IMG/VR virus record: IMGVR_UViG_3300027899_000001
Coordinates: 124,001-188,000 of that record
Direction: 5' to 3' (one strand)
DNA: 64,000 nucleotides
The first letter of the stretch is position 1; the number at the start of each line of letters is the position of its first letter. The position numbers were made by a program, and so were the translations under genes. The notes under the pieces were generated by a model. That model saw only the letters and a program-made list of their open reading frames with translations, was not told the origin of the DNA and did no database searches. Shown here one piece after another: positions 5,111-49,214 of the stretch.

Positions 5111-6262
5111 CTATTCAGGCGAAAAAATAACTTCTTGAATAGCGGGTATGATATCACCTCGTTTACATAAACTAACTATAGTTCCGGGTTGTATATGATT
5201 TTTGATAATATATCCTGCATTATAGCCCGATGCTCTTTTAACAGTTGTACCGGCTAACTGAACAGGTTTTACTAAAACAACTGGACATAATTCTCCGGTT
5301 TTACCTAAATTCCATTCAATACCTATTACAGTTGTAACAGCTTCTTCTGGCACGAACTTTATCGCAACTGCCCAATTCGGGTCATGTTCATTTTCTCCAA
5401 GAAGTTCTCTATATGCATAATCAAATGAAAATACAACTCCGTCAAGACCTAAATCAAATTGTTCACGAAGTCTTTCATTATTTTTCATTACAGTAATATA
5501 GAGTTGTTCTCTTGGAGGTATTATAGCAGAATATGAAGTTGAAAATATAGGATATTCTTTTACAAGTTTTGTAAAATGTGTTATATCTTCATGATATCCA
5601 TCAATTAAAAAATGAAGAGGAACAAGAGTTATTTCGCTTACCTTTTGAACATCAAAATCATCTTTTCCTATAACTCCTGCAACATAATTACGAGCATTTG
5701 CGAAATCTGCAGCATATTTTTCATTAAAAATCTTTTTACTTATTACTGCCTCACATCTAATTTCTGTAAGAGGTGTAGTGTTGTATTCTGAAAGTTCTTC
5801 ATCATAAAAAAGTTCTGGAAGATATTTCCTAAATCTATCAGTAACATCTTTTCCTGTTTTTCCATCTCCACGAGTAAGAACTGCTTCAAGTTTTGGACCA
5901 CGATATATTATATTAATCGCGCTGCCATCAAATTTAGGAGAATAATGAATGTAAGCACTTTCTCCACCTGCAGCTTTAACTCTGGATTCTCTTTTATTAA
6001 ACCAATCAAAGAATTCCTTTTCCATATAATTGGTTACGCCATCTTTGCTTTCAGTTTGAATTTTTGAAAGAGAACGCATGGGATGTGGATGCGGAAAATC
6101 AAAGTCTTTACGTTTTGATCCTACCTGTTCAATGACTTTAGATCCAGCTTCTTTAAGTTCTTTTTCAAGGACATCAAATGCCGAGTCTGTCATTATTGGA
6201 GTTCCTTCGTAATATGCTATTTTAGCTTTAAGATACTGAGTTTCAAGATTTTGAATATTCAT
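5111..6262 (-). CDS. ligA: NAD-dependent DNA ligase, N-terminal part (adenylation and OB domains)
   Basis: YYEG..D..FD, KFDG, TRGDG..G.DVT, RNY.AG, DGVV, WAVAIKF, RGDIIP. Confidence 0.9.
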   Translation of the reverse strand: MNIQNLETQYLKAKIAYYEGTPIMTDSAFDVLEKELKEAGSKVIEQVGSKRKDFDFPHPHPMRSLSKIQTESKDGVTNYMEKEFFDWFNKRESRVKAAGGESAYIHYSPKFDGSAINIIYRGPKLEAVLTRGDGKTGKDVTDRFRKYLPELFYDEELSEYNTTPLTEIRCEAVISKKIFNEKYAADFANARNYVAGVIGKDDFDVQKVSEITLVPLHFLIDGYHEDITHFTKLVKEYPIFSTSYSAIIPPREQLYITVMKNNERLREQFDLGLDGVVFSFDYAYRELLGENEHDPNWAVAIKFVPEEAVTTVIGIEWNLGKTGELCPVVLVKPVQLAGTTVKRASGYNAGYIIKNHIQPGTIVSLCKRGDIIPAIQEVIFSPE

Positions 6263-30225: not shown

Positions 30226-31040
30226 TAATATGCGCTAAATCTTAATTTTCCTTTTATTTGACAATATTTTCTAACTGACGTACGAAAAGTGGGTTTACCG
30301 TGTGCTGCGTTATAAAAAATTACATAATCACCATCCACTATTTTTGGTCCATTTATTTTAATAGTTCTTAAATTATCAAAACAACAAGCAAATCTTCCAC
30401 GTATATAATTAAATTTTATATAACTGGGAAGCCTACTTAAATCTTCATAAGATATATCTATATCGTCCTTTGAATCTAACGTTAAATCATTATTTATTAT
30501 AAAATCTCCGCCTTCAACTACTTTTCGTTTTGTAAATTCTTTTATCCAATCATTAATTTGTCTTGGCAATCCTATACCCAAATCATAAATAGGATCTGAT
30601 TCCTCAACAAATTTTTCAGCTAATATATTTTTTTCTTTTAATTTTCGTATACCCATCAAAAGATCATTACACGTTTCATCTAATCCTCTTTTTCTAAGTT
30701 CTTTAAGCGTCTGTTTAACATCAGCGCCATTGTCTATTAAAAATTTGCATCCTTTCCAATTATGATCGTATGCACAATTACCTAAAAAATATCCATAAGA
30801 TTTAGAATGTGATGCGTTTATATCTACTAATTTAGAATCTAATAAAAATTTTGCAAAAATATATTCATTATTACTTAAGCATATTTCAAACATAGAATCG
30901 TAATGTTTACCATTTACTAACTCACGTCTGCCTTTTTTTATTATATAGTCTTCAATTTTAGCTAACATTCCTATACCAAGATCACGAATGGGATCTGATT
31001 CTTCAGCAAATTTTTCGTTTATATGTTCTTTTACAATCAT
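30225..31040 (-). CDS. Tag family polyprotein, 2 modules (ankyrin-like, LRR-like)
   Basis: Two tags; CKFLIDNGADV; LPSYIKFNYIRGRF. Confidence 0.8.
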   Translation of the reverse strand: MIVKEHINEKFAEESDPIRDLGIGMLAKIEDYIIKKGRRELVNGKHYDSMFEICLSNNEYIFAKFLLDSKLVDINASHSKSYGYFLGNCAYDHNWKGCKFLIDNGADVKQTLKELRKRGLDETCNDLLMGIRKLKEKNILAEKFVEESDPIYDLGIGLPRQINDWIKEFTKRKVVEGGDFIINNDLTLDSKDDIDISYEDLSRLPSYIKFNYIRGRFACCFDNLRTIKINGPKIVDGDYVIFYNAAHGKPTFRTSVRKYCQIKGKLRFSAY

Positions 31041-32827
31041 TAGTCGTTAATTGCTTTTAATAATTGACCGCTCCAATATCTATACTCTGAAAAAATAGTA
31101 TCATATAAATTATGAATAGAGCTGGGTGTAAGTTCCAAAAATAATGATGGATTATTATCTTCAATTGAGCGAAAAGCTGGAAGTCTATCTTCATTTTCAA
31201 GTTCACCAACATTGAATTTATCTTCAACATTTAATCTTCCACCCATGATTTCTTCTTCAAAGAACAGTTGAATAGTTATTTCAGATTTCTTACCTGCATC
31301 TGTAATAATCACAATGGGTTCAAAATCTGGACGACAATATTGAAATACTTCTGTTATATTCCAAGAATCAAGTAATCCAAATCCTGGAATAAGAGCATTA
31401 TTATCATTCATTAGAGCTTGCATTTGCGCTTTTACAGTTTCATCTGAAGCATGAAAATCTTTTCCTTCTATTCTAAATTTATTACTTATACAAAATAAAA
31501 TAACAGGAGCTTTCCACATTTGATTTATTCTGATAACATTTGTCATCTGAGCAACTGTAAAAGGCTCAAATGTTGTAATATAAACTGCACATGGTTTTTG
31601 ACCTTTTGCAACATCTCGTATTTTAGGTTCAAATGCTTTCTGAATTGATGCTATAACTCTCATGTTATCTACATCAGTAGGGTTTCTTTTCTTAAATGCA
31701 TCAACTACTATATTTTCTGAACGAGCTTCATTCAACATATAATAGCCTTCGCCTTCTTGAAATTTATTAGTGTAATTATTTATTAATGTAACATATGAAT
31801 TGAATTTTTCAACAATCATTTCTGTTAATAATCCATAAGACTTTTTATACTTTCTAAATGAAGATAATATAACTTTAAATAGTGCTTCATATATTGGAGC
31901 TTTTTCAATCCATTTTAATGTTTCTTCATTAGTAATAAATTTTTTATTTAATTTTCCATTATGTCCAAACTGAGGAGGCATTAAATATTTTGAATCTATT
32001 GTTTCGTTTACAGTTTTAATATCACAATACTTATTAAATATATCACAAACAATATTTATATACCTTTCATCTTTAGAATCTGCTTCTAATATTGGAAAAT
32101 TATATCCACTCATAAATGTATTTAAGTCTGTAATTATTATATCATATACATCTCGTGATTCATTTTCTTTTTCATATGCTTCATTAAGAAGTTCAAATTC
32201 ATATGATATAATTTGAGCTAATTTATCTTTAGATTTAATGACGATTCCTTCTATGATATCTTCTCTTGAATATACATTATGAAGAGTTTTTTCAATCATT
32301 TTTGCAAATGTCATGGTTTCTCCTTCATATTGTTTTGTATCATATGCAATAAGAAGTTTCTTTTGTTCTTCATTCAATTTTCCTTCAAATAATACAGGAG
32401 GTCTTCCCATACACAATACAGAAGCCCATTCTTTAACTGTATTATAATCAAAAGATTCTGATACTTTATCACCATTTCTACGAGTTACATCTGTAAGAAT
32501 ATACTTTGGAAGTTTTGAATATGGAATTCTTAAAGGTCTTTCAACTGGAGTATAATATAAACCAAAGAATAATCCTTCAGGAATTTGTGCATCTTTAGTT
32601 ATGATAGGAATTTCAAGCATAGCGCTCTCATAAATATCGGTGAGAGTTCTATCTATTAAAGTAATTGGACTATTATCTTTTTTATAAAAGAGAATTTCAT
32701 CTCCCTTTTTTTCAAAGATTAAACGATAAGTGTCAATTTTTTCGGTAATAACGACATCTTCATTTAATAAAGAATCTACGTATTTTTGTCCTTTTCGTTC
32801 TAAGACTTTTGATAACGTGTTTAACAT
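31040..32827 (-). CDS. RNA-ligase-like nucleotidyltransferase domain fused to a degenerate cytidylyltransferase-like domain
   Basis: ITEKID and EGIVIK motifs; C-domain YITTFEPFT; likely start MLNTL at 32827. Confidence 0.5.
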   Translation of the reverse strand: MLNTLSKVLERKGQKYVDSLLNEDVVITEKIDTYRLIFEKKGDEILFYKKDNSPITLIDRTLTDIYESAMLEIPIITKDAQIPEGLFFGLYYTPVERPLRIPYSKLPKYILTDVTRRNGDKVSESFDYNTVKEWASVLCMGRPPVLFEGKLNEEQKKLLIAYDTKQYEGETMTFAKMIEKTLHNVYSREDIIEGIVIKSKDKLAQIISYEFELLNEAYEKENESRDVYDIIITDLNTFMSGYNFPILEADSKDERYINIVCDIFNKYCDIKTVNETIDSKYLMPPQFGHNGKLNKKFITNEETLKWIEKAPIYEALFKVILSSFRKYKKSYGLLTEMIVEKFNSYVTLINNYTNKFQEGEGYYMLNEARSENIVVDAFKKRNPTDVDNMRVIASIQKAFEPKIRDVAKGQKPCAVYITTFEPFTVAQMTNVIRINQMWKAPVILFCISNKFRIEGKDFHASDETVKAQMQALMNDNNALIPGFGLLDSWNITEVFQYCRPDFEPIVIITDAGKKSEITIQLFFEEEIMGGRLNVEDKFNVGELENEDRLPAFRSIEDNNPSLFLELTPSSIHNLYDTIFSEYRYWSGQLLKAIND

Positions 32828-32843
32828 AATTTTAGATTTTAAT

Positions 32844-33194
32844 TTATATTTTTTTAGTAATTGGGTGTTCTTTTTTTCTTTGGTGATCAATAATATATTG
32901 TCGTAAAGAATGGTACTGAGGAGAAGCTTTTTCTCTATTAATAGTTATATATTGTTCACAATATTCTTGTAACATTTTTGCATAATCAGTAGTAATAAAA
33001 TGAGTAGAATCAGTAGATATTAATAACATTCTATTATCAACTTTACATACTATTGGAATAATATCATATAGCCATTTAACAAGATCCTCGATAGATTTAA
33101 AATCACGCACGTGAAAAACACCAATACCCATTGTTTGTATAGGATCGGGATCTTCTAAAAATTTCTCCCCTAAATATTCCCTAACTTTTTTCAC
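32844..33194 (-). CDS. Tag family (degenerate tag), 1 module
   Basis: LGEKFLEDPDPIQTMGIG; RDF...WLY payload class. Confidence 0.7.
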   Translation of the reverse strand: MKKVREYLGEKFLEDPDPIQTMGIGVFHVRDFKSIEDLVKWLYDIIPIVCKVDNRMLLISTDSTHFITTDYAKMLQEYCEQYITINREKASPQYHSLRQYIIDHQRKKEHPITKKI

Positions 33195-39846: not shown

Positions 39847-40533
39847 TTATATATCGATCTTTTTTAATTTACATTTTTCTCCGTGCCATTTTTTATAATT
39901 ACCCGGGTCAAATTCTTTTTTACAATATTCACATATTTTTTTCATATTTCGTATGGGTGCCCACCCATCTTTTTTATACATTCCATTTTTATTTCCGCTA
40001 ATAGATTTTCCAATTTGTTTTTTTGTTTTTTCTGTATGAAATAATCCAATGTGCGAAAATTTCATCATATGAATAGTTTCATTAGTATAAACATTACATT
40101 TTCCTTTATTCCATGGAGAGTTTCCTTTCATATGTTCTTTCCATTCTTTAGAAAATTTTTTTCCTTTATTAATATTCTTATATTTTTTTCTTGTTTCTTC
40201 AGATATTGGCGTATTTTTTCGTAAATATACTGCATATTCATAATCTTTTGAAGAAACAAATTTTCCATCTTTTTTACTACATGCCATATAATGAAATGCA
40301 CAAGCAATATTTCTATTTCCTTTATAAATATATGTTAATAATTTATGACACACAAAATGTTCTCTTGCTGTTAATAGAACAAGATTATCTTGTTCGTTTG
40401 ATCCGCCTAAACACTTTGGAAGTATATGATGATTTTCATAATATACATAATTAGCATTATCTTTTTTTAATTTTTCTCTGTTTTCTGATTTTGCTTTTTG
40501 AATTATACTATTGTATGCTCTTTGATAATTCAT
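39847..40533 (-). CDS. HNH homing endonuclease with NUMOD3
   Basis: ENHHILPKCLGGSN...NLVLLTAREH; PWNKG. Confidence 0.85.
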   Translation of the reverse strand: MNYQRAYNSIIQKAKSENREKLKKDNANYVYYENHHILPKCLGGSNEQDNLVLLTAREHFVCHKLLTYIYKGNRNIACAFHYMACSKKDGKFVSSKDYEYAVYLRKNTPISEETRKKYKNINKGKKFSKEWKEHMKGNSPWNKGKCNVYTNETIHMMKFSHIGLFHTEKTKKQIGKSISGNKNGMYKKDGWAPIRNMKKICEYCKKEFDPGNYKKWHGEKCKLKKIDI

Positions 40534-40552: not shown

Positions 40553-41659
40553 TTAAATATCTAACATATCTAATGGATCATTTGAAAAATAATTTTCAAA
40601 ATTAGGAAGTTTAATATTATTTTGTTTTGACCATATTAATATATCATTAATATCCCATTTTTTTCTATAAGGGGCATTTATATCTCTAAGAAATTTTTCC
40701 CATAAAAATACTTCATCGCCATCATTAATATGTTCTATTGATCTATTAATACCTGTATCATCTTTATCATATAAATATTTTAATTGTATGTCTAACGGAA
40801 ATGTTTTATTAGCACCAGTATTTGCTATTGAATTTGGAATTAAAAATGAGTCAAATGGTCCTTCTAAAAGTATTATCGATTTAGAATAATCTAATAAACA
40901 TATATTAAATATAGAAGAAATCGTATCAATTTCTTCGGGTATCAAAGAAGAATTCATATTAAGCATTTCATATATTTTACTTAATTTATATGTTAAATAT
41001 TTTGTGTTTCCATAAAATAATCTTTTTTGCATACCAAGTATTTTTCCAGATTGGGTCAAATTTAATATAAATAAATTGTTTTCTTGCATATTATATAAAA
41101 ATTTTTCTTTATTAAATTGTAATCTATTGTTTAACCATCTTTGTATATTTGTGTTATCTATATTACTTAAATTTAATTGTTTACATAAATAATTTTTATC
41201 TATGGCGTATTTGTCTATTGCATCCATATCTAAAAAAAGTGACATGTCATACTTTATATTAGAATGGGAAGAAAAATCTTCAATACCTTTTGCTATATAG
41301 TTTATAACACTTAAATCTAAATTAATTTTATAATCAGTAAAAAACTGATCAATTCTTTTTGCTTCTCCACAATTGTGGCATTTAAAAAAATGAGCATATT
41401 TGCCCCTTAAGATAAAGTTGCCTCTTTTCTTATAATTACTTTTCATACTATCACCGCAAATTGGACACGCAAACGAAATACGATCAACATAAGGACGTAT
41501 TTGTTGCTTACCAAAATTTCCCGGAAATCTTTGTTCTAAAATAGGTTTTAATAATGATATAAGATGCTGTCTATATTCTGATTCAGATACGACATCATCA
41601 ATATTAGAAAGGGAAGAGTCGAAACTAATCCCTTTCGTTATATCAATGTTTGTTTGCAT
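40553..41659 (-). CDS. DNA primase (T4 gp61-like)
   Basis: CPICGDS..KRG..CHNC, EGPFDS, D.D, KWDIND. Confidence 0.85.
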   Translation of the reverse strand: MQTNIDITKGISFDSSLSNIDDVVSESEYRQHLISLLKPILEQRFPGNFGKQQIRPYVDRISFACPICGDSMKSNYKKRGNFILRGKYAHFFKCHNCGEAKRIDQFFTDYKINLDLSVINYIAKGIEDFSSHSNIKYDMSLFLDMDAIDKYAIDKNYLCKQLNLSNIDNTNIQRWLNNRLQFNKEKFLYNMQENNLFILNLTQSGKILGMQKRLFYGNTKYLTYKLSKIYEMLNMNSSLIPEEIDTISSIFNICLLDYSKSIILLEGPFDSFLIPNSIANTGANKTFPLDIQLKYLYDKDDTGINRSIEHINDGDEVFLWEKFLRDINAPYRKKWDINDILIWSKQNNIKLPNFENYFSNDPLDMLDI

Positions 41660-41660
41660 G

Positions 41661-42659
41661 TTAGATGCTGTTAAGTGCGTCGCTTAAATCTCCAAATCCC
41701 CCATCATCATTATTATTTAAATTTGGAAGATCGAGATTAGGAAGAGAATTAAGTCCACTTCCAAGGTTTAAATCATCAAGATTCAAATCTGATGCAGTTA
41801 TTCCTGTTCCTGTTGGTGGAGTTTGTTTTCCAGGAGTACCTGCTGGTGCAGATTGTGAAGGATTATTTCTTATATCTGCATAAGCTGCTGATGGAATTTG
41901 TCCAGTTACTGCAAGAATAACTTGATTAACATAATCATGCATTTCTTGATCCCACTCTTTAAATGCATATTTTGTAAGATCTGGACTTTGTTCCTTTAAG
42001 AAATTGAATACAACCTCTCTTGAAGTTTTATCATTAATTGGAAGTAATTTTCCAGTTTTCTCATCAGGAAGTAAAAGAGGAATTTTCTTATCAAGAAATC
42101 TTGATTGATCATAGTTATTAAATCCTGCAGCTTTTGTTATAACGAGTGCAAAAGCTTTTCCATCTAAAAGATCAAATGGTTCATGTGGTTCACCTATTAC
42201 AGGTTTCTTTTCAGCTTCAATTTTTTCAAAAATTTTCTTTCCAAATTTCCAAATCATAAGTTTTCCTTCAGCTTCTTTATTTTGATCGTCTTTAACGATC
42301 TGTACAACTGCTGTGTATAAATGCTTACGACTAAAAATTTCAGATTTCTTTTGTTCCTGAATTGATTCAGATTTACGAAGCTTGAAAAACATATCCTGAA
42401 GAACAGAAGGTTTTCCAACTGAAGATGGACAATCTACAAGTCTTCCTCTATTAGTTACTGGGTCTACCAACCAGCATACCCATTTGTCACTAATTGAGTG
42501 TTGTGGATCTTGCCACCATGTTACGAAACGAATAATTGATTTATAAATACCATTTTGGCCTTTTGCGGCATCGGGCTGATATTCGCCTGTGTTTTTTAGG
42601 TCTTTGCCCATCTCTACATTCGGATGAAAGAGAGAATTTAAGTCATACTTGTTTTCCAT
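41661..42659 (-). CDS. Single-stranded DNA-binding protein (T4 gp32-like)
   Basis: IRF, KFGKKIFEKI, PFDLLDG.AF, NYDQSRF, acidic tail. Confidence 0.88.
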   Translation of the reverse strand: MENKYDLNSLFHPNVEMGKDLKNTGEYQPDAAKGQNGIYKSIIRFVTWWQDPQHSISDKWVCWLVDPVTNRGRLVDCPSSVGKPSVLQDMFFKLRKSESIQEQKKSEIFSRKHLYTAVVQIVKDDQNKEAEGKLMIWKFGKKIFEKIEAEKKPVIGEPHEPFDLLDGKAFALVITKAAGFNNYDQSRFLDKKIPLLLPDEKTGKLLPINDKTSREVVFNFLKEQSPDLTKYAFKEWDQEMHDYVNQVILAVTGQIPSAAYADIRNNPSQSAPAGTPGKQTPPTGTGITASDLNLDDLNLGSGLNSLPNLDLPNLNNNDDGGFGDLSDALNSI

Positions 42660-42822: not shown

Positions 42823-43662
42823 TTATAGTTGTGCGATAATGCGTAACGCGTAATCCTTTTCTGAACCTTTTGGTGTATCTACTTCTCCTGATTTTACAGA
42901 CACCATAGATCTAAATACACCCTTAACTCTATTAAGAGAACGAGGATTTTGAAGGTTATTTTTAATATCAGAAACAAGAGATTCAAAGGATTTATTAAAA
43001 TAATAATCACTTAAAAGAGATTCTACTATACTCCATTTAGTTGTCTTCCAAATATCTACACTATCTAATGTCTTAAAATCTGGTGTTAAATCTACTCTAC
43101 GAAGAGTTAACGCTGAGGAACTTAGATTAAATTCATATTCTTGATTCTTCGCAGGTTTAGGGAGATTTGGAAATTTATTCAAAACTCTTGGATTTTCTAA
43201 TACTACAGTTTTTATTAAACCTAACATAAGTCCTTGTTTAATTGCCGGGAGATTTAAAAATTCTAATTTAAAATTAGTTTCATCTGAAGATAAAGAGATT
43301 ATATTATCAATCTGAACAAATCCGTTTCCATTTTCTATAGGATATAATATCGTAATAATTTCTCCAGAACTTAAGAATTTTTTTCCATTATATTTAACAC
43401 TCTTAAAAGGAACTATTAAATCATCAGGAAGAGATGATACAAATTCTCCAAAATCTTTTTTAACTCTAATCTTATCGTTAGATTTTAATTCAACTATTAA
43501 ATCTATATCTCCAAAATCAGTTTTATTGGAAGTGTTATATGACCCAGATATCACTGAAGTTTTATAATTTCTATATTCAGATAACACATTATCTTGATAA
43601 TGTTGAATTGTAGATTCTACATCTTCTCTTGAAATTCTATTTCCGCCGGCGCTCCCGCTCAT
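42823..43662 (-). CDS. Pol-beta-superfamily nucleotidyltransferase
   Basis: SGS...FGDIDL...VQID. Confidence 0.7.
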   Translation of the reverse strand: MSGSAGGNRISREDVESTIQHYQDNVLSEYRNYKTSVISGSYNTSNKTDFGDIDLIVELKSNDKIRVKKDFGEFVSSLPDDLIVPFKSVKYNGKKFLSSGEIITILYPIENGNGFVQIDNIISLSSDETNFKLEFLNLPAIKQGLMLGLIKTVVLENPRVLNKFPNLPKPAKNQEYEFNLSSSALTLRRVDLTPDFKTLDSVDIWKTTKWSIVESLLSDYYFNKSFESLVSDIKNNLQNPRSLNRVKGVFRSMVSVKSGEVDTPKGSEKDYALRIIAQL

Positions 43663-45563
43663 TTTCTGAATTTATATAAGTTTGAATCTTCTGGTAAAAA
43701 TTTACCTTGTAATCCTAATCTATCTTGATTTTTAATCCAATACTCCTGTAACATAGTTGGAATATCTGTTCTTGTCGAATCTAATATCTTTAAGTAAATA
43801 TCGTAAATCTTATATAACTCAGATTGCGAAAGGTTTTTAACAAGAAACTCTCGAAGTTTATAAAAGTTATTAAGTGTTTCTCGAGTTAAAGTATCTCTAA
43901 AATTATATAACTTATTTAATAATTCTATTACTTCAGTAGGATTAGTCGCATCATATTCTGTAGTTTCTGAATTATATACTCCAGAACCATGACGGAAAGT
44001 TCTTTTCTTATTTGCGAATAGCGCTACTATTAACTGAGTTCTATGTAATCCTTTCACATTACCCTCATAAGATTCTGAGTGATAACTAAAAGTTAACCAA
44101 TCCATGTTTCCAATATTCACATCTATCTGAACATCTTTACCAACTTTCTGTCCTTGTTCATTATATTGTGGAAAACAACAGAATATAGTTCCAGCGCCAG
44201 AGTTCTTAGGATCAGCGAGTAACCCTTTAGCGATTAGTTTATCTACAATTATTTTCACCATTGAACCTAACTTAAGTTGTTTTTCAGACGCTGAGCGAGC
44301 GCGTTTCTTCTTAAGTTCGTATACTTCTGTGAATTCTTCAGGACTTATTCCCCAATCATCTAATTTAACTTCGTTATTCTCAAATATAGTATCTTCACTA
44401 AGCGCTAAATCTATATCTCCTGAAATATCTTTCTTTCCCGCAGATCCGAGTAATTTAAATTCGAAATCAACGTTTGGAAAAATAAAATTAAGTTTCTTTG
44501 TGAATCTATCCATAGTTGGTGGAATATCTTCTCGTTTAATAGGTCCTGTACCATCAAAAATATTACCCCCTTCAAATAATCGAGGAGTAAAAGATTCTTT
44601 AATATTTTGTGTATTTTCTTTAATTGCGCGAGAAATTTTATTATATACGCATTTTTCATTTTCACAATAATACGCCCAATAACTACTATCTTCACGAATT
44701 TCATATTTAAATCTTCTAAATGATGAATCATCATATTCTCCTACTATATTTTCTATGTTATATTTTACTCCCTTTACTTTATAATAAGCGCTCTTTTTAT
44801 GTATAGAAAATTCTTCCTTTTTTGGAATATAAATTTTACCTCCAAATTTTTGTTTAAGTTTATATAGAGCTGCGTGTAGAGGATTTCCTATACCTAAATC
44901 ATGAATAGGATCTGATTCTTGTGTAAATTTCTCGTTTACTGATTCTGTAATAACGTTTTTAGTCATATCCCAAATAGTTTCTACTATCGATTCTCTTATT
45001 CCGGGATAATTGGTTTTAAAGTTTCCATAATCATCGTTTAAAATATCTTGACGTAATATAGTTCCAGATATTATTTCTCCTTCATTTTCATCTGTACGAC
45101 CTTCATATCTAATTGGAGATATATCTATCGGAAGTTCTATAACTTTAACATCTGGGTGTTTTAGATGATAATATTTTCCGGTTTCAAGATGATCTTTAAC
45201 GAATTTAGTAACTCTGCCATAATCAGTATCTTTTTCTGAACCACCCATCGCATAAACTCCCGGTTGCGCTGCTTCTATAAACTTATACGCTGCCAACACA
45301 GGAACTTTAACTTCTTCTACACTAACATTATGTAAATCTTCTAAAAGTAATAAAGCGATCTGTACAGCCTCTACTGGAGTTATTCCATTACGAACGCCTG
45401 AACCTATAAAAATTCTAACTTCTTTAACTTTCGGATTTTCTACATAGCGCCTAATCATATTTACATGACCTATGTGCATAGGTTTAAAACTTCCAGGTAA
45501 TAACACGGTTATTCCTTCGTTTATATTTTCGTTTAACCAACTTATATATGATGAAAATTTCAT
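43659..45563 (-). CDS. Three-part protein: HxGH cytidylyltransferase-like, tagged module, pol-beta nucleotidyltransferase
   Basis: PGSFKPMHIGH; ESVNEKFTQESDPIHDLGIG; LGSAGKKDISGDIDL...VQID. Confidence 0.75.
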   Translation of the reverse strand: MKFSSYISWLNENINEGITVLLPGSFKPMHIGHVNMIRRYVENPKVKEVRIFIGSGVRNGITPVEAVQIALLLLEDLHNVSVEEVKVPVLAAYKFIEAAQPGVYAMGGSEKDTDYGRVTKFVKDHLETGKYYHLKHPDVKVIELPIDISPIRYEGRTDENEGEIISGTILRQDILNDDYGNFKTNYPGIRESIVETIWDMTKNVITESVNEKFTQESDPIHDLGIGNPLHAALYKLKQKFGGKIYIPKKEEFSIHKKSAYYKVKGVKYNIENIVGEYDDSSFRRFKYEIREDSSYWAYYCENEKCVYNKISRAIKENTQNIKESFTPRLFEGGNIFDGTGPIKREDIPPTMDRFTKKLNFIFPNVDFEFKLLGSAGKKDISGDIDLALSEDTIFENNEVKLDDWGISPEEFTEVYELKKKRARSASEKQLKLGSMVKIIVDKLIAKGLLADPKNSGAGTIFCCFPQYNEQGQKVGKDVQIDVNIGNMDWLTFSYHSESYEGNVKGLHRTQLIVALFANKKRTFRHGSGVYNSETTEYDATNPTEVIELLNKLYNFRDTLTRETLNNFYKLREFLVKNLSQSELYKIYDIYLKILDSTRTDIPTMLQEYWIKNQDRLGLQGKFLPEDSNLYKFRK

Positions 45564-46207
45564 TTAGTTATATAATATTTTTCGTATTTTTTTATAGTAT
45601 GTTTAATTCCAATAGTATCTATCAAGATTACTTCTGTTCCCATTCCGTAACTAGCTGAATCTGCTATTTTAAATGTTAGAGATTTTTTACTTCCTTCAAA
45701 AACTCCAGTTATTGTTTTTCCCGGCAAACCTTTTATAAAATATAACCACTCTTCATAACCATCATCTGCATTTATAATACTTCTAATAGTGTTTTCAGAA
45801 AGTTCATAAAAATTTACAACATCTACTCCTATTCCCATACTACTAACAGGATCAAATTCTTCTTCAAATTTTTCGTTAACTTTTTTATATAATTTATCTT
45901 TAACAAGTTGTTTAAATTCATCAACCCATAATGTATCAACTCGCATACCTCGTATTGTTACATATTTGCGTATAAATGCCATTATTTGCACATAATAATC
46001 ATGATTTATAACACATTCACCCGGATCTTTTAAAATATCTTCTATTTTTTCAAGATGTAATAATATTGCCGCATTTTTATATAACCATTTATGAAGATCT
46101 AGATAATTATTAAAATCTCTTTTCATATATAATCCTATGCCCATATCTCTTATAGGATCAGAATCTTCTACAAATTTCTCGTTAATATGTTCTCTAACTA
46201 CTTTCAT
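45560..46207 (-). CDS. Tag family polyprotein, 2 modules
   Basis: INEKFVEDSDPIRDMGIG; VNEKFEEEFDPVSSMGIG. Confidence 0.8.
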   Translation of the reverse strand: MKVVREHINEKFVEDSDPIRDMGIGLYMKRDFNNYLDLHKWLYKNAAILLHLEKIEDILKDPGECVINHDYYVQIMAFIRKYVTIRGMRVDTLWVDEFKQLVKDKLYKKVNEKFEEEFDPVSSMGIGVDVVNFYELSENTIRSIINADDGYEEWLYFIKGLPGKTITGVFEGSKKSLTFKIADSASYGMGTEVILIDTIGIKHTIKKYEKYYITK

Positions 46208-46644
46208 TAAAATTTTCTCTCATGTAATTTTGTATGATACGCCATTTGAATATCACCTAAATAATAAATATAATCACTGCGTGACGCTTCTGTTAGTGTA
46301 GCAATTTTTCCAAATTCTGTAATAAATCCTTTAAATAATTCTTTTTTATTATTATATAATTTTCTTATTTTTAATTGTTTTTTATTATTTACAGTAAATT
46401 GTTTTATTTCTTCTTTCATAAATCCTTCAAATTCACCTTCATCACCTATATAATACACATCTGATAAAGGAAGTTCAAAAAAATTATGTATTAATTTCTT
46501 TTCATGTGGACTTAAAACTAATGATCTGTTAACACCATGTTTTTCAATTTTTGGTGCGATACTGTATATTCCTATACCCATATCATGGATAGGATCAGAT
46601 TCTTCTTTAAATACTTCGTTAATATATTCTCTTACTAATTTCAT
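46207..46644 (-). CDS. Tag family, 1 module
   Basis: INEVFKEESDPIHDMGIG. Confidence 0.8.
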   Translation of the reverse strand: MKLVREYINEVFKEESDPIHDMGIGIYSIAPKIEKHGVNRSLVLSPHEKKLIHNFFELPLSDVYYIGDEGEFEGFMKEEIKQFTVNNKKQLKIRKLYNNKKELFKGFITEFGKIATLTEASRSDYIYYLGDIQMAYHTKLHERKF

Positions 46645-47474
46645 TTTTGTAGTGGAGCATTTAATTTCATTGATGTAATTACATCGCCTTTTACTTCACA
46701 ACGGCTTCTAATCTCTTCTTCTGTAAATTCTACATCGTTACCAACTATTACATAATTTCCACCAATATATTTTGGCATTCCTTCTAAAGATTTCAAACGA
46801 CATGTATAAACTGCAAAATTTCCACCAACGTGTCTAGGAAAACCTTTTAATGTTGTTATTTCTCCTAAAATTATTACGAATCCTAATTTTGTTTTATTAA
46901 ATTGAATATAATCTGGAAAATCTTGAAAATTTTTGCCTATAGTATAAATTTCATCATAAAGGTCAATAGTTCCGTCTTGTCTTATTTTATATCTTTTTAT
47001 CTCATGTTCTTTTAACCATTTCTTAATTTTAGGAATTACACCAATACCTAAGTCTTGTACAGGATCAGAATCTTCTATAAATTTTTCATTTACAGATTCT
47101 TTTAATTTGTCTATTTCTTCTGGTTTAGGAATCTCAAAATGTTCTAAAAACTTTTTTCCTGATAATGTTAAATATTCATCTCCGACAAACACAAAATCTG
47201 GGAACCTGAACCATTTTGGAAATTTCTCATATGTAACTAAATTTAATTTAATTTTTCCTTTAGGTGTAAAATTTATTTCTTTAATTACACAATAAGAATC
47301 AGGAGTAATATGAAAATTAGAAACAGGATATTGAGGAACTCTAGGTTTTATACTTTTTTTACATCTAATAATATCACCGCGCTTTAGTTTATGAAATATA
47401 CCAATTCCTAAATCATAAATAGGATCGCTATCTTCAACAAATACTTCATTAATATATTCTCGTACTATATTCAT
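46641..47474 (-). CDS. Tag family polyprotein, 2 modules (second LRR-like)
   Basis: Two tags; ITTLKGFP..V.G, LKSLEGMP. Confidence 0.8.
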   Translation of the reverse strand: MNIVREYINEVFVEDSDPIYDLGIGIFHKLKRGDIIRCKKSIKPRVPQYPVSNFHITPDSYCVIKEINFTPKGKIKLNLVTYEKFPKWFRFPDFVFVGDEYLTLSGKKFLEHFEIPKPEEIDKLKESVNEKFIEDSDPVQDLGIGVIPKIKKWLKEHEIKRYKIRQDGTIDLYDEIYTIGKNFQDFPDYIQFNKTKLGFVIILGEITTLKGFPRHVGGNFAVYTCRLKSLEGMPKYIGGNYVIVGNDVEFTEEEIRSRCEVKGDVITSMKLNAPLQK

Positions 47475-47947
47475 GTAGTTCTTATCTTATCTTTTGCTAT
47501 TTTACAATATTTCTGTACGTATTCTCTTGTAAATCTTTTTTTATTACCACCACACATAAATTTTTTGCCAATAATTTCTGGACAATATTCTAATGAAGTT
47601 AATTTATTAAATCTGCAATCAAAATCGCCAGTTACTATTTTAGGACATCCCCTAAGAGTTGTCATATTACAATTACATATTATAAATTCTCCATCTATTT
47701 TATTAAAATTTATATACTCTGGAAAATTTCCGCAATTATCTGGAAGCGCAGTAAATCCTTGGCAATCTATAGTGCCATCGTTATTTATAGTGTAATTTCT
47801 AATTCCATCACACTGATTATTATTAGATATTCTATTTATCATTCCTATCCATTTTTCAATTTTGTGTATTATTCCTATACCCATATCTTGTATAGGATCT
47901 GATTCTTCTGAAAATTTTTCGTTGATATGTTCTCGGACTATGTTCAA
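47471..47947 (-). CDS. Tag family, LRR-like payload
   Basis: INEKFSEESDPIQDMGIG; MTTLRGCPKIVTGDFDC. Confidence 0.8.
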   Translation of the reverse strand: MNIVREHINEKFSEESDPIQDMGIGIIHKIEKWIGMINRISNNNQCDGIRNYTINNDGTIDCQGFTALPDNCGNFPEYINFNKIDGEFIICNCNMTTLRGCPKIVTGDFDCRFNKLTSLEYCPEIIGKKFMCGGNKKRFTREYVQKYCKIAKDKIRTT

Positions 47948-47957
47948 AGCGATTTTA

Positions 47958-48002
47958 TTTTATATATTTAAGAAAAAAGGAGATAATTTATTTTATCTCC
48001 TT
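47958..48002 (-). promoter_or_regulatory. Terminator fused to a late-promoter variant
   Basis: AAGGAGATAA/TTATCTCCTT hairpin, T tract, AAATATATAAA. Confidence 0.6.
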
Positions 48003-48011
48003 GTGTTATTA

Positions 48012-49214
48012 TTATATAATTTGAATTTCTGGAAACATTACTATAATCTTTCCTTTATATCCATCGTTTCTTAATGATTCTATAATATAATCTTTAAAAT
48101 TATGAGCCAATATCAAAATATAATCAGGAAATTTTGTTTTAAGAATATCTCTGCTAAAAACTTCTATTCCTGTTCCAGGCACGAATTTTCCTTGTTTTTC
48201 AAGAGTATCATCTATAATAAAATCAATTGTATTATAATCTAATTTACAGGTATTTAAAAATACACAGCCTTTAATTGCAGCACCAAATCCTGCAATTTTA
48301 ACGTTTTGTTCTTTTAATCCTTCAAAGAATGATCTAAAATATTCTATTTTTAAATCAATGCTCATGCCCCAATTGATACAATATTCTTTATCTATAAACT
48401 TTTCAAGATTTAAAAATGATTCGATTGTATTATCAACAAGATCTTTATTTTTTGAAATTATTAATCTTAATGTTCCTGTATGTATATCATGATAAGAAAC
48501 ATTTATAACATAAAGGCCTTCTTGTTCAACTAATTTTTTTACTGCAGTTAAACAATAATAATATACATGCTCATGATATGCTTGATCATAGAAATTGTTA
48601 ATAAAAGTAGACATAAGATAAGGAAATTCTAAGCACCATATTCCTTCTTCATCTAAATTATTATAAATTCCTTTTACAAAAGATCTTAAAGGGGGAGTAT
48701 GCTGAAATACATTTGTAGAAGTTATTAACTTTGCAGTTTTTGGCAAAATTGTAGCTTCATTAAAATATTTGTTGATATATGTTATATTATTTTTTTGATT
48801 TATATCTACAAAACTTTTACTGCATTCTACATTAACATATTCTAAATCGGAATATTTTTTTCTAAATTGCAAAAGTAAACTACCATCATTACCTCCTATA
48901 TCTGCTATTAACGATCCTCTTACAAGATTAACATAATCTGTAACAAAATCTGCCATTTTACTACAGTGTTCAAGATATGGTTTACTTATACTTGAGTGAT
49001 ATAGATAATTAAGATATATGTCATCAGAATTTACAGTTTCAGTAAGAGATACTAGTTTACTATCAGGAAAAAATTGAAGAACCATAGGATACTTTTTAAT
49101 CTTTAATGATTCTTCGCGAGTTGAACTTAAATTTCCTTCAATGGGAATCATTCCCAAATCAAGAAACGCAAATTTATCGGCACTACTAGTTATAGGACAT
49201 ACTTCTATTTTCAT
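48012..49214 (-). CDS. NDP-sugar C-methyltransferase-like SAM-dependent methyltransferase
   Basis: DIGGNDG.LL, NVFQH, EFPY, YHEHVYY, HTGTLR, FGAAIKG, KQGKFVPG, LAHNF. Confidence 0.85.
   Translation of the reverse strand: MKIEVCPITSSADKFAFLDLGMIPIEGNLSSTREESLKIKKYPMVLQFFPDSKLVSLTETVNSDDIYLNYLYHSSISKPYLEHCSKMADFVTDYVNLVRGSLIADIGGNDGSLLLQFRKKYSDLEYVNVECSKSFVDINQKNNITYINKYFNEATILPKTAKLITSTNVFQHTPPLRSFVKGIYNNLDEEGIWCLEFPYLMSTFINNFYDQAYHEHVYYYCLTAVKKLVEQEGLYVINVSYHDIHTGTLRLIISKNKDLVDNTIESFLNLEKFIDKEYCINWGMSIDLKIEYFRSFFEGLKEQNVKIAGFGAAIKGCVFLNTCKLDYNTIDFIIDDTLEKQGKFVPGTGIEVFSRDILKTKFPDYILILAHNFKDYIIESLRNDGYKGKIIVMFPEIQII

What the first reader, a model, noticed from the sequence alone, without database searches (positions are those of the whole stretch)
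42823..45563. Nucleotidyltransferase pair built into the tag system
Seen: the 634-aa ORF reads leader (LNENINE), HxGH cytidylyltransferase-like domain, ESVNE+tag+module, then LFE|GGNIF and a pol-beta NTase. The next gene is a second pol-beta NTase beginning MSGSAGGN. Domain borders coincide with [ILV]xE sites. Inference: a polyprotein that delivers nucleotide-transferring enzymes from the virion (compare T4 Alt), possibly for RNA repair, NAD salvage or interference with nucleotide-signal defences.
Basis: partly seen in the sequence, partly recalled or inferred. Interest (0 to 1): 0.62.

Follow-up and report, generated by a model that had tools for sequence, protein, structure and literature searches.

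The report
Phage polyprotein carrying polymerase-X-like enzymes
A 405-kb freshwater T4-like phage encodes two polymerase-beta/X-like enzymes, one of them fused to an adenylyltransferase-like domain in a precursor whose domain borders look like head-protease cutting sites, so the first enzyme and its fusion partners are probably loaded into the phage head and injected with the DNA.

Summary
ORF 43659-45563(-) has five parts: a 12-16 aa leader, an HxGH...ISxTxxR (HIGH-superfamily) nucleotidyltransferase, one copy of the genome's 72-copy tag, a unique ~100-aa module, and a pol-beta-fold enzyme that starts at GGN. The ATGA-coupled next gene, 42823-43662(-), is a distant paralog.

The polyprotein reading has strong comparative support. 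All 62 NTase1 relatives with any N-terminal extension (34 distinct sequences) end it in [LIVT]-x-E directly before GGN; most of the rest start M-GG. Stand-alone HxGH relatives stop at the same ...ITE/VVE. The genome has a T4 gp21-type protease, and its capsid protein carries LNE|AAMGG, like T4 gp23 LTE|AEIGG.

Cleavage and virion location are untested. The conserved HxGH-NTase1-NTase2-gp32-primase order and a NAD-dependent ligase in the window favour DNA gap or end repair plus NAD re-synthesis. I found nothing for RNA repair or signal interference.

The parts
45516..45563 (-). N-terminal leader of ORF634 (residues 1-16) with LNE-12 and INE-16. It resembles a capsid-targeting sequence.
   Evidence: The same 'MKF..F..WLNEN' leader occurs on most stand-alone HxGH relatives and is absent from a few. 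It resembles the first half of tag variants elsewhere in the genome. T4 IPII/IPIII leader MKTYQEFIAE for comparison.
44943..45515 (-). HIGH-superfamily (HxGH, ISxTxxR) nucleotidyltransferase domain, residues 17-207, ending ...VITE.
   Evidence: Family profile against PDB: phosphopantetheine adenylyltransferases, E 1.4e-5, over the first ~65 residues only. NCBIfam PPAT and NMNAT models all fall far below cut-off. PF01467 scores 15.6 bits against a cut-off of 21. Motifs are conserved in 25 homologs, many of which end exactly at ITE/VVE.
44886..44942 (-). Internal copy of the genome-wide tag (S-VNE|KFTQESDPIHDLGIG), residues 208-226.
   Evidence: 72 copies; [ILV]xE precedes KF in 70 of 72. The relative P0003 lacks the tag and module altogether; P0006 has the tag with a different module.
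44571..44885 (-). Unique ~105-aa module of unknown fold (residues 227-331), ending in a disordered linker with IKE-316, IKE-323 and LFE-331.
   Evidence: No Pfam hit. No paralog in the genome. Residues 322-331 have pLDDT below 50 in the model.
43662..44570 (-). NTase1: a family-X-polymerase-like nucleotidyltransferase (residues 332-634) starting at GGN, with G373-S374, D383, D385 and D481 and a C-terminal helical extension.
42823..43662 (-). NTase2: a paralogous Pol X-like nucleotidyltransferase (279 aa), ATGA-coupled to ORF634. It has no leader and no tag.
45560..47947 (-). Four upstream, translationally coupled tagged ORFs (six tag copies) in the same apparent transcription unit. A terminator-like hairpin lies at 47977-48002.
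5111..6262 (-). Short NAD-dependent DNA ligase, a possible consumer of NAD made by the HxGH domain (context, inferred link).
   Evidence: PF01653, 89.9 bits, E 3e-26.
40553..42659 (-). gp32-type SSB and primase directly downstream. The order HxGH-NTase1-NTase2-gp32-primase is conserved in a 156-kb relative.

Best explanation
ORF634 is a precursor polyprotein of a 405-kb freshwater T4-like jumbo phage.

Proposed mechanism:
1. A short leader like the T4 capsid-targeting sequence, and/or the internal tag, brings the protein into the prohead core.
2. The phage's gp21-type prohead protease cuts after Glu at [LIV]-x-E sites. These sit at residues 12/16, 207/211 and 316/323/331.
3. Cutting releases three products: a HIGH-superfamily nucleotidyltransferase, a small tag-headed module, and a minimal family-X-polymerase-like enzyme whose N-terminus is GGN.
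4. The products leave the head with the DNA.

The coupled downstream gene makes a second, paralogous Pol X-like enzyme. It has no leader, so it may stay cytoplasmic or ride along with the first.

The most likely chemistry is extension of DNA 3' ends by the two Pol X-like enzymes, either gap filling or end tailing on the phage genome. The HIGH domain most plausibly re-adenylates NMN to NAD+ for the phage's NAD-dependent ligase.

Shown: the folds, the catalytic motifs, the borders and the synteny. Inferred: cleavage, packaging and substrates.
For: Folds and motifs.

Borders:
- 62 of 120 NTase1 homologs have an extension, in 34 distinct sequences. P1 is E in 34 of 34, and P3 is L, I, V or T in all. 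The background rate of such a tripeptide is 0.024 per position. Of the other 58, 48 start M-GGN and 10 start M-GGH.
- 9 NTase2 homologs carry MILLE or MILNE before the otherwise N-terminal SG, and 101 start M-SG.
- Nearly all listed NTase2 fusions have [hydrophobic]-x-E right after the core.
- Stand-alone HxGH proteins end at ITE or VVE.
- The linker before GGN is predicted disordered.

Protease:
- PF03420 scores 61 bits in the same genome.
- The capsid protein has ALNE|AAMGG, against T4 gp23 FLTE|AEIGG.
- The T4 rules come from the literature: 10-19-aa propeptides, processing determinants at residues 8 and 10, and Alt cut at both ends (PMC9026906); cleavage after Glu (PMC5694885).
- N-terminal tag copies share M1, K2, E6, I8 and E10 with the T4 IPII/III leader.

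DNA context:
- The order HxGH-NTase1-NTase2-gp32-primase is conserved.
- A PD-(D/E)XK exonuclease and primase lie next to the pair in immuto-like phages.
- A NAD-dependent ligase lies in the window.
Against: - There is no proteomic or N-terminal data. The phage is uncultured and found in one freshwater sample, with no RNA run.
- The genes lie in the replication module, not the head module.
- About half of NTase1 relatives, and NTase2 here, have no leader, so packaging cannot be essential to the enzymes' role.
- The HIGH domain fails every NMNAT and PPAT equivalog cut-off.
- Both Pol X-like proteins lack the thumb/HhH and 8-kDa domains. DNA rather than RNA, protein or small-molecule acceptors is inferred from fold and context only.
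- [LIV]xE is a common tripeptide in this Glu-, Leu- and Ile-rich proteome.
Confidence: 0.55

Rival explanations
1. These are ordinary cytoplasmic replication and repair enzymes that are never packaged. The fusion is just a gene fusion. The leaders and [LIV]xE borders serve another purpose (folding, regulation, or cleavage by another protease), or mark the places where tag cassettes recombine into genes.
For: The genes sit among gp32, primase and exonuclease genes. Many relatives have no leader. NTase2 has none. Tag plus module cassettes attach to different genes in different relatives, which fits recombinational shuffling.
Against: E is invariant directly before GGN in 34 distinct extensions, with L or I at P3. 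That is the specificity of the protease family this genome encodes, and that protease acts inside proheads. The leaders resemble the T4 capsid-targeting sequence.
Confidence: 0.25
2. The pair acts on RNA ends. It would repair or tail tRNA or mRNA, like RlaP or CCA-adding enzymes working with an RNA ligase, or it would tail host RNAs as a takeover effector.
For: After the Pol X chains, the next structural matches are terminal uridylyl and poly(A) transferases. The Atu_ph07 homolog sits beside a weakly RNA-ligase-like gene (E 0.002, below cut-off). There is a weak RNA_ligase match in the window at 31040-32890. Jumbo phages commonly carry such NTases (PMC7824862).
Against: RlaP (PF10127) is not matched in the genome. 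The TUTase matches cover only about 100 palm residues, whereas the Pol X matches cover 160-190 residues including the fingers. No firm RNA ligase adjacency appears in any locus examined.
Confidence: 0.12
3. This is an anti-defence nucleotide module. The HIGH domain rebuilds NAD+ that host NADase defences deplete, and the NTases make or modify nucleotide signals. It is injected so that it acts before phage genes are expressed.
For: Phage NAD+ synthesis by HIGH-family NadM and NadR is documented as a counter-defence (PMC9503650; PMC7824862). An AAA_28 (NadR-kinase-family) gene lies near the pair in L004, and a NAD synthetase lies in immuto.
Against: No NadV, Nudix or kinase partner is fused here. 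The HIGH domain is below every NMNAT threshold. CD-NTase and OAS matches are weaker and cover the palm only.
Confidence: 0.1

Closest known systems
Family X DNA polymerases, especially the minimal ASFV Pol X (174 aa)
   Different: No HMMER-level sequence similarity to any solved Pol X. There is an extra C-terminal helical domain. The enzyme occurs as a conserved paralog pair. The N-terminus is a conserved GGN. It is linked by fusion to a HIGH-family enzyme. It occurs in a phage.
T4 internal proteins and Alt (capsid-targeting sequence plus gp21 processing)
   Same: A short N-terminal propeptide ends in [LI]-x-E. A gp21-type protease is present. Diverse cargo sits behind a shared leader. Alt is an enzyme that is cut at both ends and injected.
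   Different: Here several cargo domains are strung in one polypeptide. The conserved tag continues 16 residues past the putative cut (KFxEESDPIxD[LM]GIG). There are 72 copies. The cargo is Pol X-like and HIGH-family enzymes rather than an ADP-ribosyltransferase.
Polyvalent proteins of phages and conjugative elements (Iyer et al. 2017, PMC5512222)
   Same: Unrelated enzymatic domains in one polypeptide, predicted to be injected with the DNA and processed. Relatives fuse NTase2, the HIGH domain and two HExxH regions in proteins of 907-951 aa.
   Different: ORF634 has no metallopeptidase domain, so processing would be done by the prohead serine protease. The Pol-beta NTases of that paper are minimal four-strand versions from Firmicute conjugative elements. 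Those here are Pol X-like.
NadR/NadM-type NMN adenylyltransferases and CoaD (PPAT)
   Same: HxGH and ISxTxxR motifs, and a Rossmann-like N-terminal match.
   Different: Scores are 12-23 bits against cut-offs of 103-341. The match covers only the first third of the domain. Substrate is undetermined.

Membership tests
Pol-beta-like nucleotidyltransferase superfamily | hG[GS] motif, DxD, and a third acidic residue on the neighbouring strand | tested here: met
   NTase1: G373-S374, D383, D385, D481. NTase2: G40-S41, D52, D54, D119. S, the three Asp and (in NTase2) G are invariant in the 71- and 67-sequence alignments; the NTase1 G is near-invariant.
Family X DNA polymerase | Palm plus fingers (nucleotide-selecting) subdomain fold | tested here: met
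Family X DNA polymerase | Sequence-model membership (Pfam DNA_pol_B_palm PF14792, cut-off 25 bits) | tested here: inconclusive
   P0002 scores 18.1 bits and P0001 scores nothing. The NTase2 homologs P0213 and P0256 score 25.5 and 27.7 bits.
Family X DNA polymerase | Thumb with HhH motifs and an 8-kDa dRP-lyase domain (absent from ASFV Pol X) | tested here: not met
   Both proteins begin at the first palm strand. The alignments start at pol beta residue ~145 for NTase2 and at ~94-142 for NTase1.
Family X DNA polymerase | Template-directed dNTP addition to a DNA 3'-OH | not testable with these tools
   Needs an enzyme assay.
RlaP (RNA-ligase-associated Pol-beta NTase, PF10127) | Match to the family model, and adjacency to an RNA ligase | tested here: not met
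   No PF10127 match in the whole genome at E<=1. No firm RNA ligase lies next to the pair in the window, L004, L006, L031 or immuto.
HIGH / cytidylyltransferase-like superfamily (PF01467) | HxGH motif after strand 1, and a C-terminal ISxTxxR motif | tested here: met
   H30-I-G-H33 and I165-S-G-T-I-L-R171, conserved in homologs. Profile against PPAT structures: E 1.4e-5. The Pfam score is sub-threshold, 15.6 against 21 bits.
NMN adenylyltransferase (NadD/NadR/NadM) or PPAT (CoaD) | Equivalog-level model score | tested here: not met
   The best scores are 22.6 bits (cut-off 103) for CoaD and 20.9 bits (cut-off 127) for NMNAT.
T4-type capsid-targeted, gp21-processed head protein | Short N-terminal propeptide ending in [LI]-x-E, and a gp21-family protease in the genome | tested here: met
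   LNE-12 and INE-16. PF03420 scores 61 bits. The capsid protein has LNE|AAMGG, like gp23 LTE|AEIGG.
T4-type capsid-targeted, gp21-processed head protein | Found in virions in the cleaved form | not testable with these tools
   Uncultured phage. One DNA run holds the stretch and no RNA or proteome is available.
Polyvalent proteins (Iyer 2017) | Disparate domains in one polypeptide, usually with a zincin-like MPTase | tested here: inconclusive
   ORF634 has three unrelated domains but no HExxH. Relatives of 907-951 aa have two HExxH motifs. P0171 gives a weak peptidase hit.

The most novel reading that the evidence does not exclude
The 72-copy tag is a modular cargo-loading and processing signal: a T4-like targeting decapeptide plus a docking motif, D[LM]GIG. 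From memory, that motif recalls encapsulin cargo-loading peptides. Through this signal a jumbo phage would fill its head with dozens of small proteins, including a ready-made DNA repair kit of Pol X-like polymerase and an NAD-regenerating enzyme. The kit would mend the 405-kb genome, or protect its ends, at the moment of entry and before any phage gene is expressed.
Probability: 0.2. Interest if true: 0.8.

Novelty: new variant of a known kind. Interest (0 to 1): 0.6.

Why it matters
The Pol X-like pair is a large family of uncharacterised phage proteins: more than 1400 and more than 430 proteins with E <= 0.001 in the word search. No Pfam or PHROG model reaches its curated cut-off on these two proteins. 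The pair is conserved next to gp32 and primase in aquatic T4-like phages of Bacteroidota.

Family X polymerases are not, to my knowledge, a recognised part of phage replication or virion content. If the enzymes are packaged, this would be a phage counterpart of the ASFV arrangement (Pol X-based repair; DNA-repair proteins reported in particles), and a natural example of multi-enzyme delivery through T4-type capsid targeting.

The exact E|GGN junction gives a clean, testable prediction of protease specificity and of mature N-termini. It also offers a natural leader and linker set for loading foreign enzymes into large capsids.

Tried and rejected
- Complex prediction of NTase1 with NTase2 returned 'no answer' (score 0.00). 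This is not evidence either way, so a heterodimer is not claimed.
- HMMER profiles of NTase1 and NTase2 against PDB sequences found nothing meaningful. Only structure comparison worked.
- PHROGs gave no hit for either ORF or the tagged neighbours.
- RlaP and DUF6267 (an Atlas lead; no match in this genome, T4, immuto or Atu_ph07) were rejected as families.
- The Atu_ph07 gene downstream of its NTase1 homolog is not an NTase2. Its upstream 'RNA ligase' is sub-threshold and has no PDB match.
- The tag has no tblastn match in 50,697 GenBank phage records.
- The central module has no paralog in the genome and no Pfam hit.
- Read laying and the large representative search were not used. No RNA run exists, and the word searches had already given deep families.
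- No alternative genetic code was needed.
Full report
**Setting.** The window is bases 124001-188000 of a 405,016-bp virus record with direct terminal repeats. GC is 27-29%, and the only run that holds the stretch is a freshwater metagenome. The genome encodes T4-type gp32, a primase, a gp21-family prohead protease fused to a long scaffold (781 aa), and a gp23-like capsid protein. Its gp32 is nearest to an uncultured 462-kb phage and to the Lak megaphages. It is therefore a T4-related jumbo phage, probably of Bacteroidota.

**Observation.**
- ORF634 (43659-45563, minus strand) and ORF279 (42823-43662, minus strand) are real and share an ATGA overlap.
- ORF634 is also ATGA-coupled to the last of four upstream ORFs that all carry the tag. 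A terminator-like hairpin at 47977-48002 precedes this run.
- ORF634 reads as: leader (1-16, with LNE-12 and INE-16), an HxGH domain (17-207, ending VITE), SVNE plus the tag (208-226), a unique module (227-331, ending RLFE), then a domain that begins GGNIF (332-634).
- ORF279 begins MSGSAGGN.
- The tag, consensus [ILV]-N-E-K-F-x-E-E-S-D-P-[IV]-x-D-[ML]-G-I-G, occurs 28 times in the window and 72 times in the genome. 48 copies are at ORF starts and 24 are internal. Synonymous codons vary freely, including both Ser codon families, so the conservation is at the protein level.

**What the domains are.**
- Neither ORF has a Pfam or PHROG family above threshold.
- AlphaFold2 with family alignments gave confident models: NTase1 (residues 322-634) pLDDT 92 and pTM 0.85; NTase2 pLDDT 95 and pTM 0.90.
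- Foldseek against the PDB returns DNA polymerases beta and lambda first for both (E 3e-6 and 3e-7).
- Terminal uridylyl and poly(A) transferases, CD-NTases, OAS and MenT follow, with only about 100 palm residues aligned.
- In the viral structure library the named matches are giant-virus 'DNA polymerase family X' proteins and the Atu_ph07 homolog.
- Both proteins keep the GS motif and all three carboxylates, invariant across 71 and 67 homologs.
- The two are distant paralogs: hhalign gives 73% probability and E 3e-5 over the first helix, GS and DxD.
- Both start at the first palm strand. They therefore lack the thumb/HhH and 8-kDa domains, like ASFV Pol X, and add a C-terminal helical part.
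- They are not RlaP.
- The N-terminal domain of ORF634 has HIGH (H30-H33) and ISGTILR (165-171). Its family profile hits phosphopantetheine adenylyltransferase structures at E 1.4e-5, but only over about 65 residues. NCBIfam PPAT and NMNAT models score far below cut-off. It belongs to the HIGH superfamily with undefined substrate.

**Relatives and borders.** This is the key evidence.

- *NTase1.* There are more than 1400 homologs. Of the 120 listed, 48 start M-GGN, 10 start M-GGH, and 62 carry an extension. The extension is an 11-18-aa leader or an upstream domain, in 34 distinct sequences. Every one ends in E directly before GGN, with L (21), I (11), V (1) or T (1) at P3. The background rate of such a tripeptide is 0.024 per position.
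- *NTase2.* 101 of 119 homologs start M-SG, and nine have MILLE or MILNE before the SG. In nearly all listed fusions the core is followed at once by [hydrophobic]-x-E, for example RLAE, SLLE, ATLE and KLNE.
- *HxGH.* Stand-alone proteins mostly carry the same MKF..F..WLNEN leader, and many stop exactly at ...ITE or ...VVE, where ORF634 continues into its tag.
- *Module variation.* P0003 (521 aa) is HxGH joined directly to NTase1, without tag or module. P0006 has the tag with a different module. P0148 puts a tag plus module on the C-terminus of NTase2.
- *Accessibility.* The ten residues before GGN are predicted disordered.

**Is this the phage's protease motif?**
- T4 prohead proteases cut after Glu (PMC5694885).
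- T4 internal proteins have 10-19-residue propeptides. Targeting maps to residues 4 and 7, and processing to residues 8 and 10. Alt is cut at both ends (PMC9026906).
- T4 IPII and IPIII start MKTYQEFIAE, and gp23 is cut at LTE|AEIGG (sequences read; the cut position is from my knowledge of T4).
- This phage's capsid protein has ALNE|AAMGG at residue 43.
- The N-terminal tag copies read MK[IL]V[RK]E[HY]INE, which matches the T4 leader at positions 1, 2, 6, 8 and 10.
- The leader of ORF634 is a second leader type that also heads tag variants elsewhere in the genome.
- Together these make prohead targeting and cleavage the most economical reading. It remains inference.

**Function.**
- The order HxGH, NTase1, NTase2, gp32, primase is kept in a 156-kb relative where the three are separate genes.
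- In immuto-like phages the pair follows a primase and a PD-(D/E)XK exonuclease.
- An archaeal structural neighbour is fused to a PD-(D/E)XK domain.
- The window encodes a NAD-dependent DNA ligase, and ORF634 holds the genome's only HIGH-family domain.
- I therefore favour DNA 3'-end extension (gap filling or end tailing), with NAD re-synthesis for nick sealing.
- Fusion of the HIGH domain to NTase1 here, and to NTase2 in hundreds of relatives, ties the three together. If the linkers are cleaved, though, the fusion may reflect co-delivery rather than coupled chemistry.
- Relatives of 907-951 aa add two HExxH regions. That recalls the injected polyvalent proteins of Iyer et al. (PMC5512222), whose own Pol-beta NTases are a different, minimal kind.

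**Limits.**
- The NTase1-NTase2 complex prediction gave no answer.
- The role of the free GGN N-terminus, the part of the tag after the cut site, and the central module are unexplained.
- The tag is absent from GenBank phages. A strict form of it occurs in 11 other IMG/VR contigs from six samples.

Noticed in passing
window 12231-56315 (28 copies); whole genome G000 (72 copies): Tag [ILV]NE-KFxEESDPIxD[LM]GIG heads modules of about 90-130 aa, singly or in strings of up to six. N-terminal copies mimic the T4 IPII/IPIII capsid-targeting decapeptide. The tag is absent from GenBank phages and present in 11 other IMG/VR contigs.
   Followed up: partly
L003 (G000:C1:306658-309003, minus strand): The gp21-type prohead protease is fused to a ~600-aa coiled-coil, scaffold-like region in one 781-aa ORF, directly upstream of the capsid gene. 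A two-tag ORF lies just upstream at C1:309694-310515.
   Followed up: partly
G000:C1:304273-304710 (minus strand), outside the window: A 145-aa ORF next to the capsid gene is almost entirely collagen-like G-x-Q/G-I-T triplets. It may be a head fibre or decoration protein.
   Followed up: no
window 5111-6262 (-): Unusually short (383 aa) NAD-dependent DNA ligase (PF01653, 89.9 bits).
   Followed up: partly
window 46641-47474 (-), 47471-47947 (-); G000:C1:309694-310515: Several tagged ORFs end in a shared leucine-rich-repeat-like pattern (LTSL.G.P..V.G.F.C..N.L.SLE). The tagged modules therefore include recurring families.
   Followed up: no
window 31040-32890 (-): A 616-aa ORF has a weak RNA_ligase (PF09414) match (E 0.003, below cut-off). 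A tagged ORF lies just upstream (32844-33194).
   Followed up: no
L004:10835-12875; L031:7905-8270: In relatives, QueD-like (PTPS), radical-SAM-like and AAA_28 genes follow the NTase pair. A YopX gene sits between NTase1 and NTase2, and GIY-YIG/HNH homing endonucleases flank the locus, as at window 39847-40533.
   Followed up: no
proteins P0196 and eight others: Some NTase2 relatives carry only a 5-residue pre-sequence (MILLE or MILNE) before the conserved SG.AGGN start. It fits the cleavage motif but is too short to be a targeting leader.
   Followed up: partly
window 48012-49214 (-): A sugar C-methyltransferase-like gene (Methyltransf_14, _13 and _23) lies just upstream of the tagged operon.
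   Followed up: no
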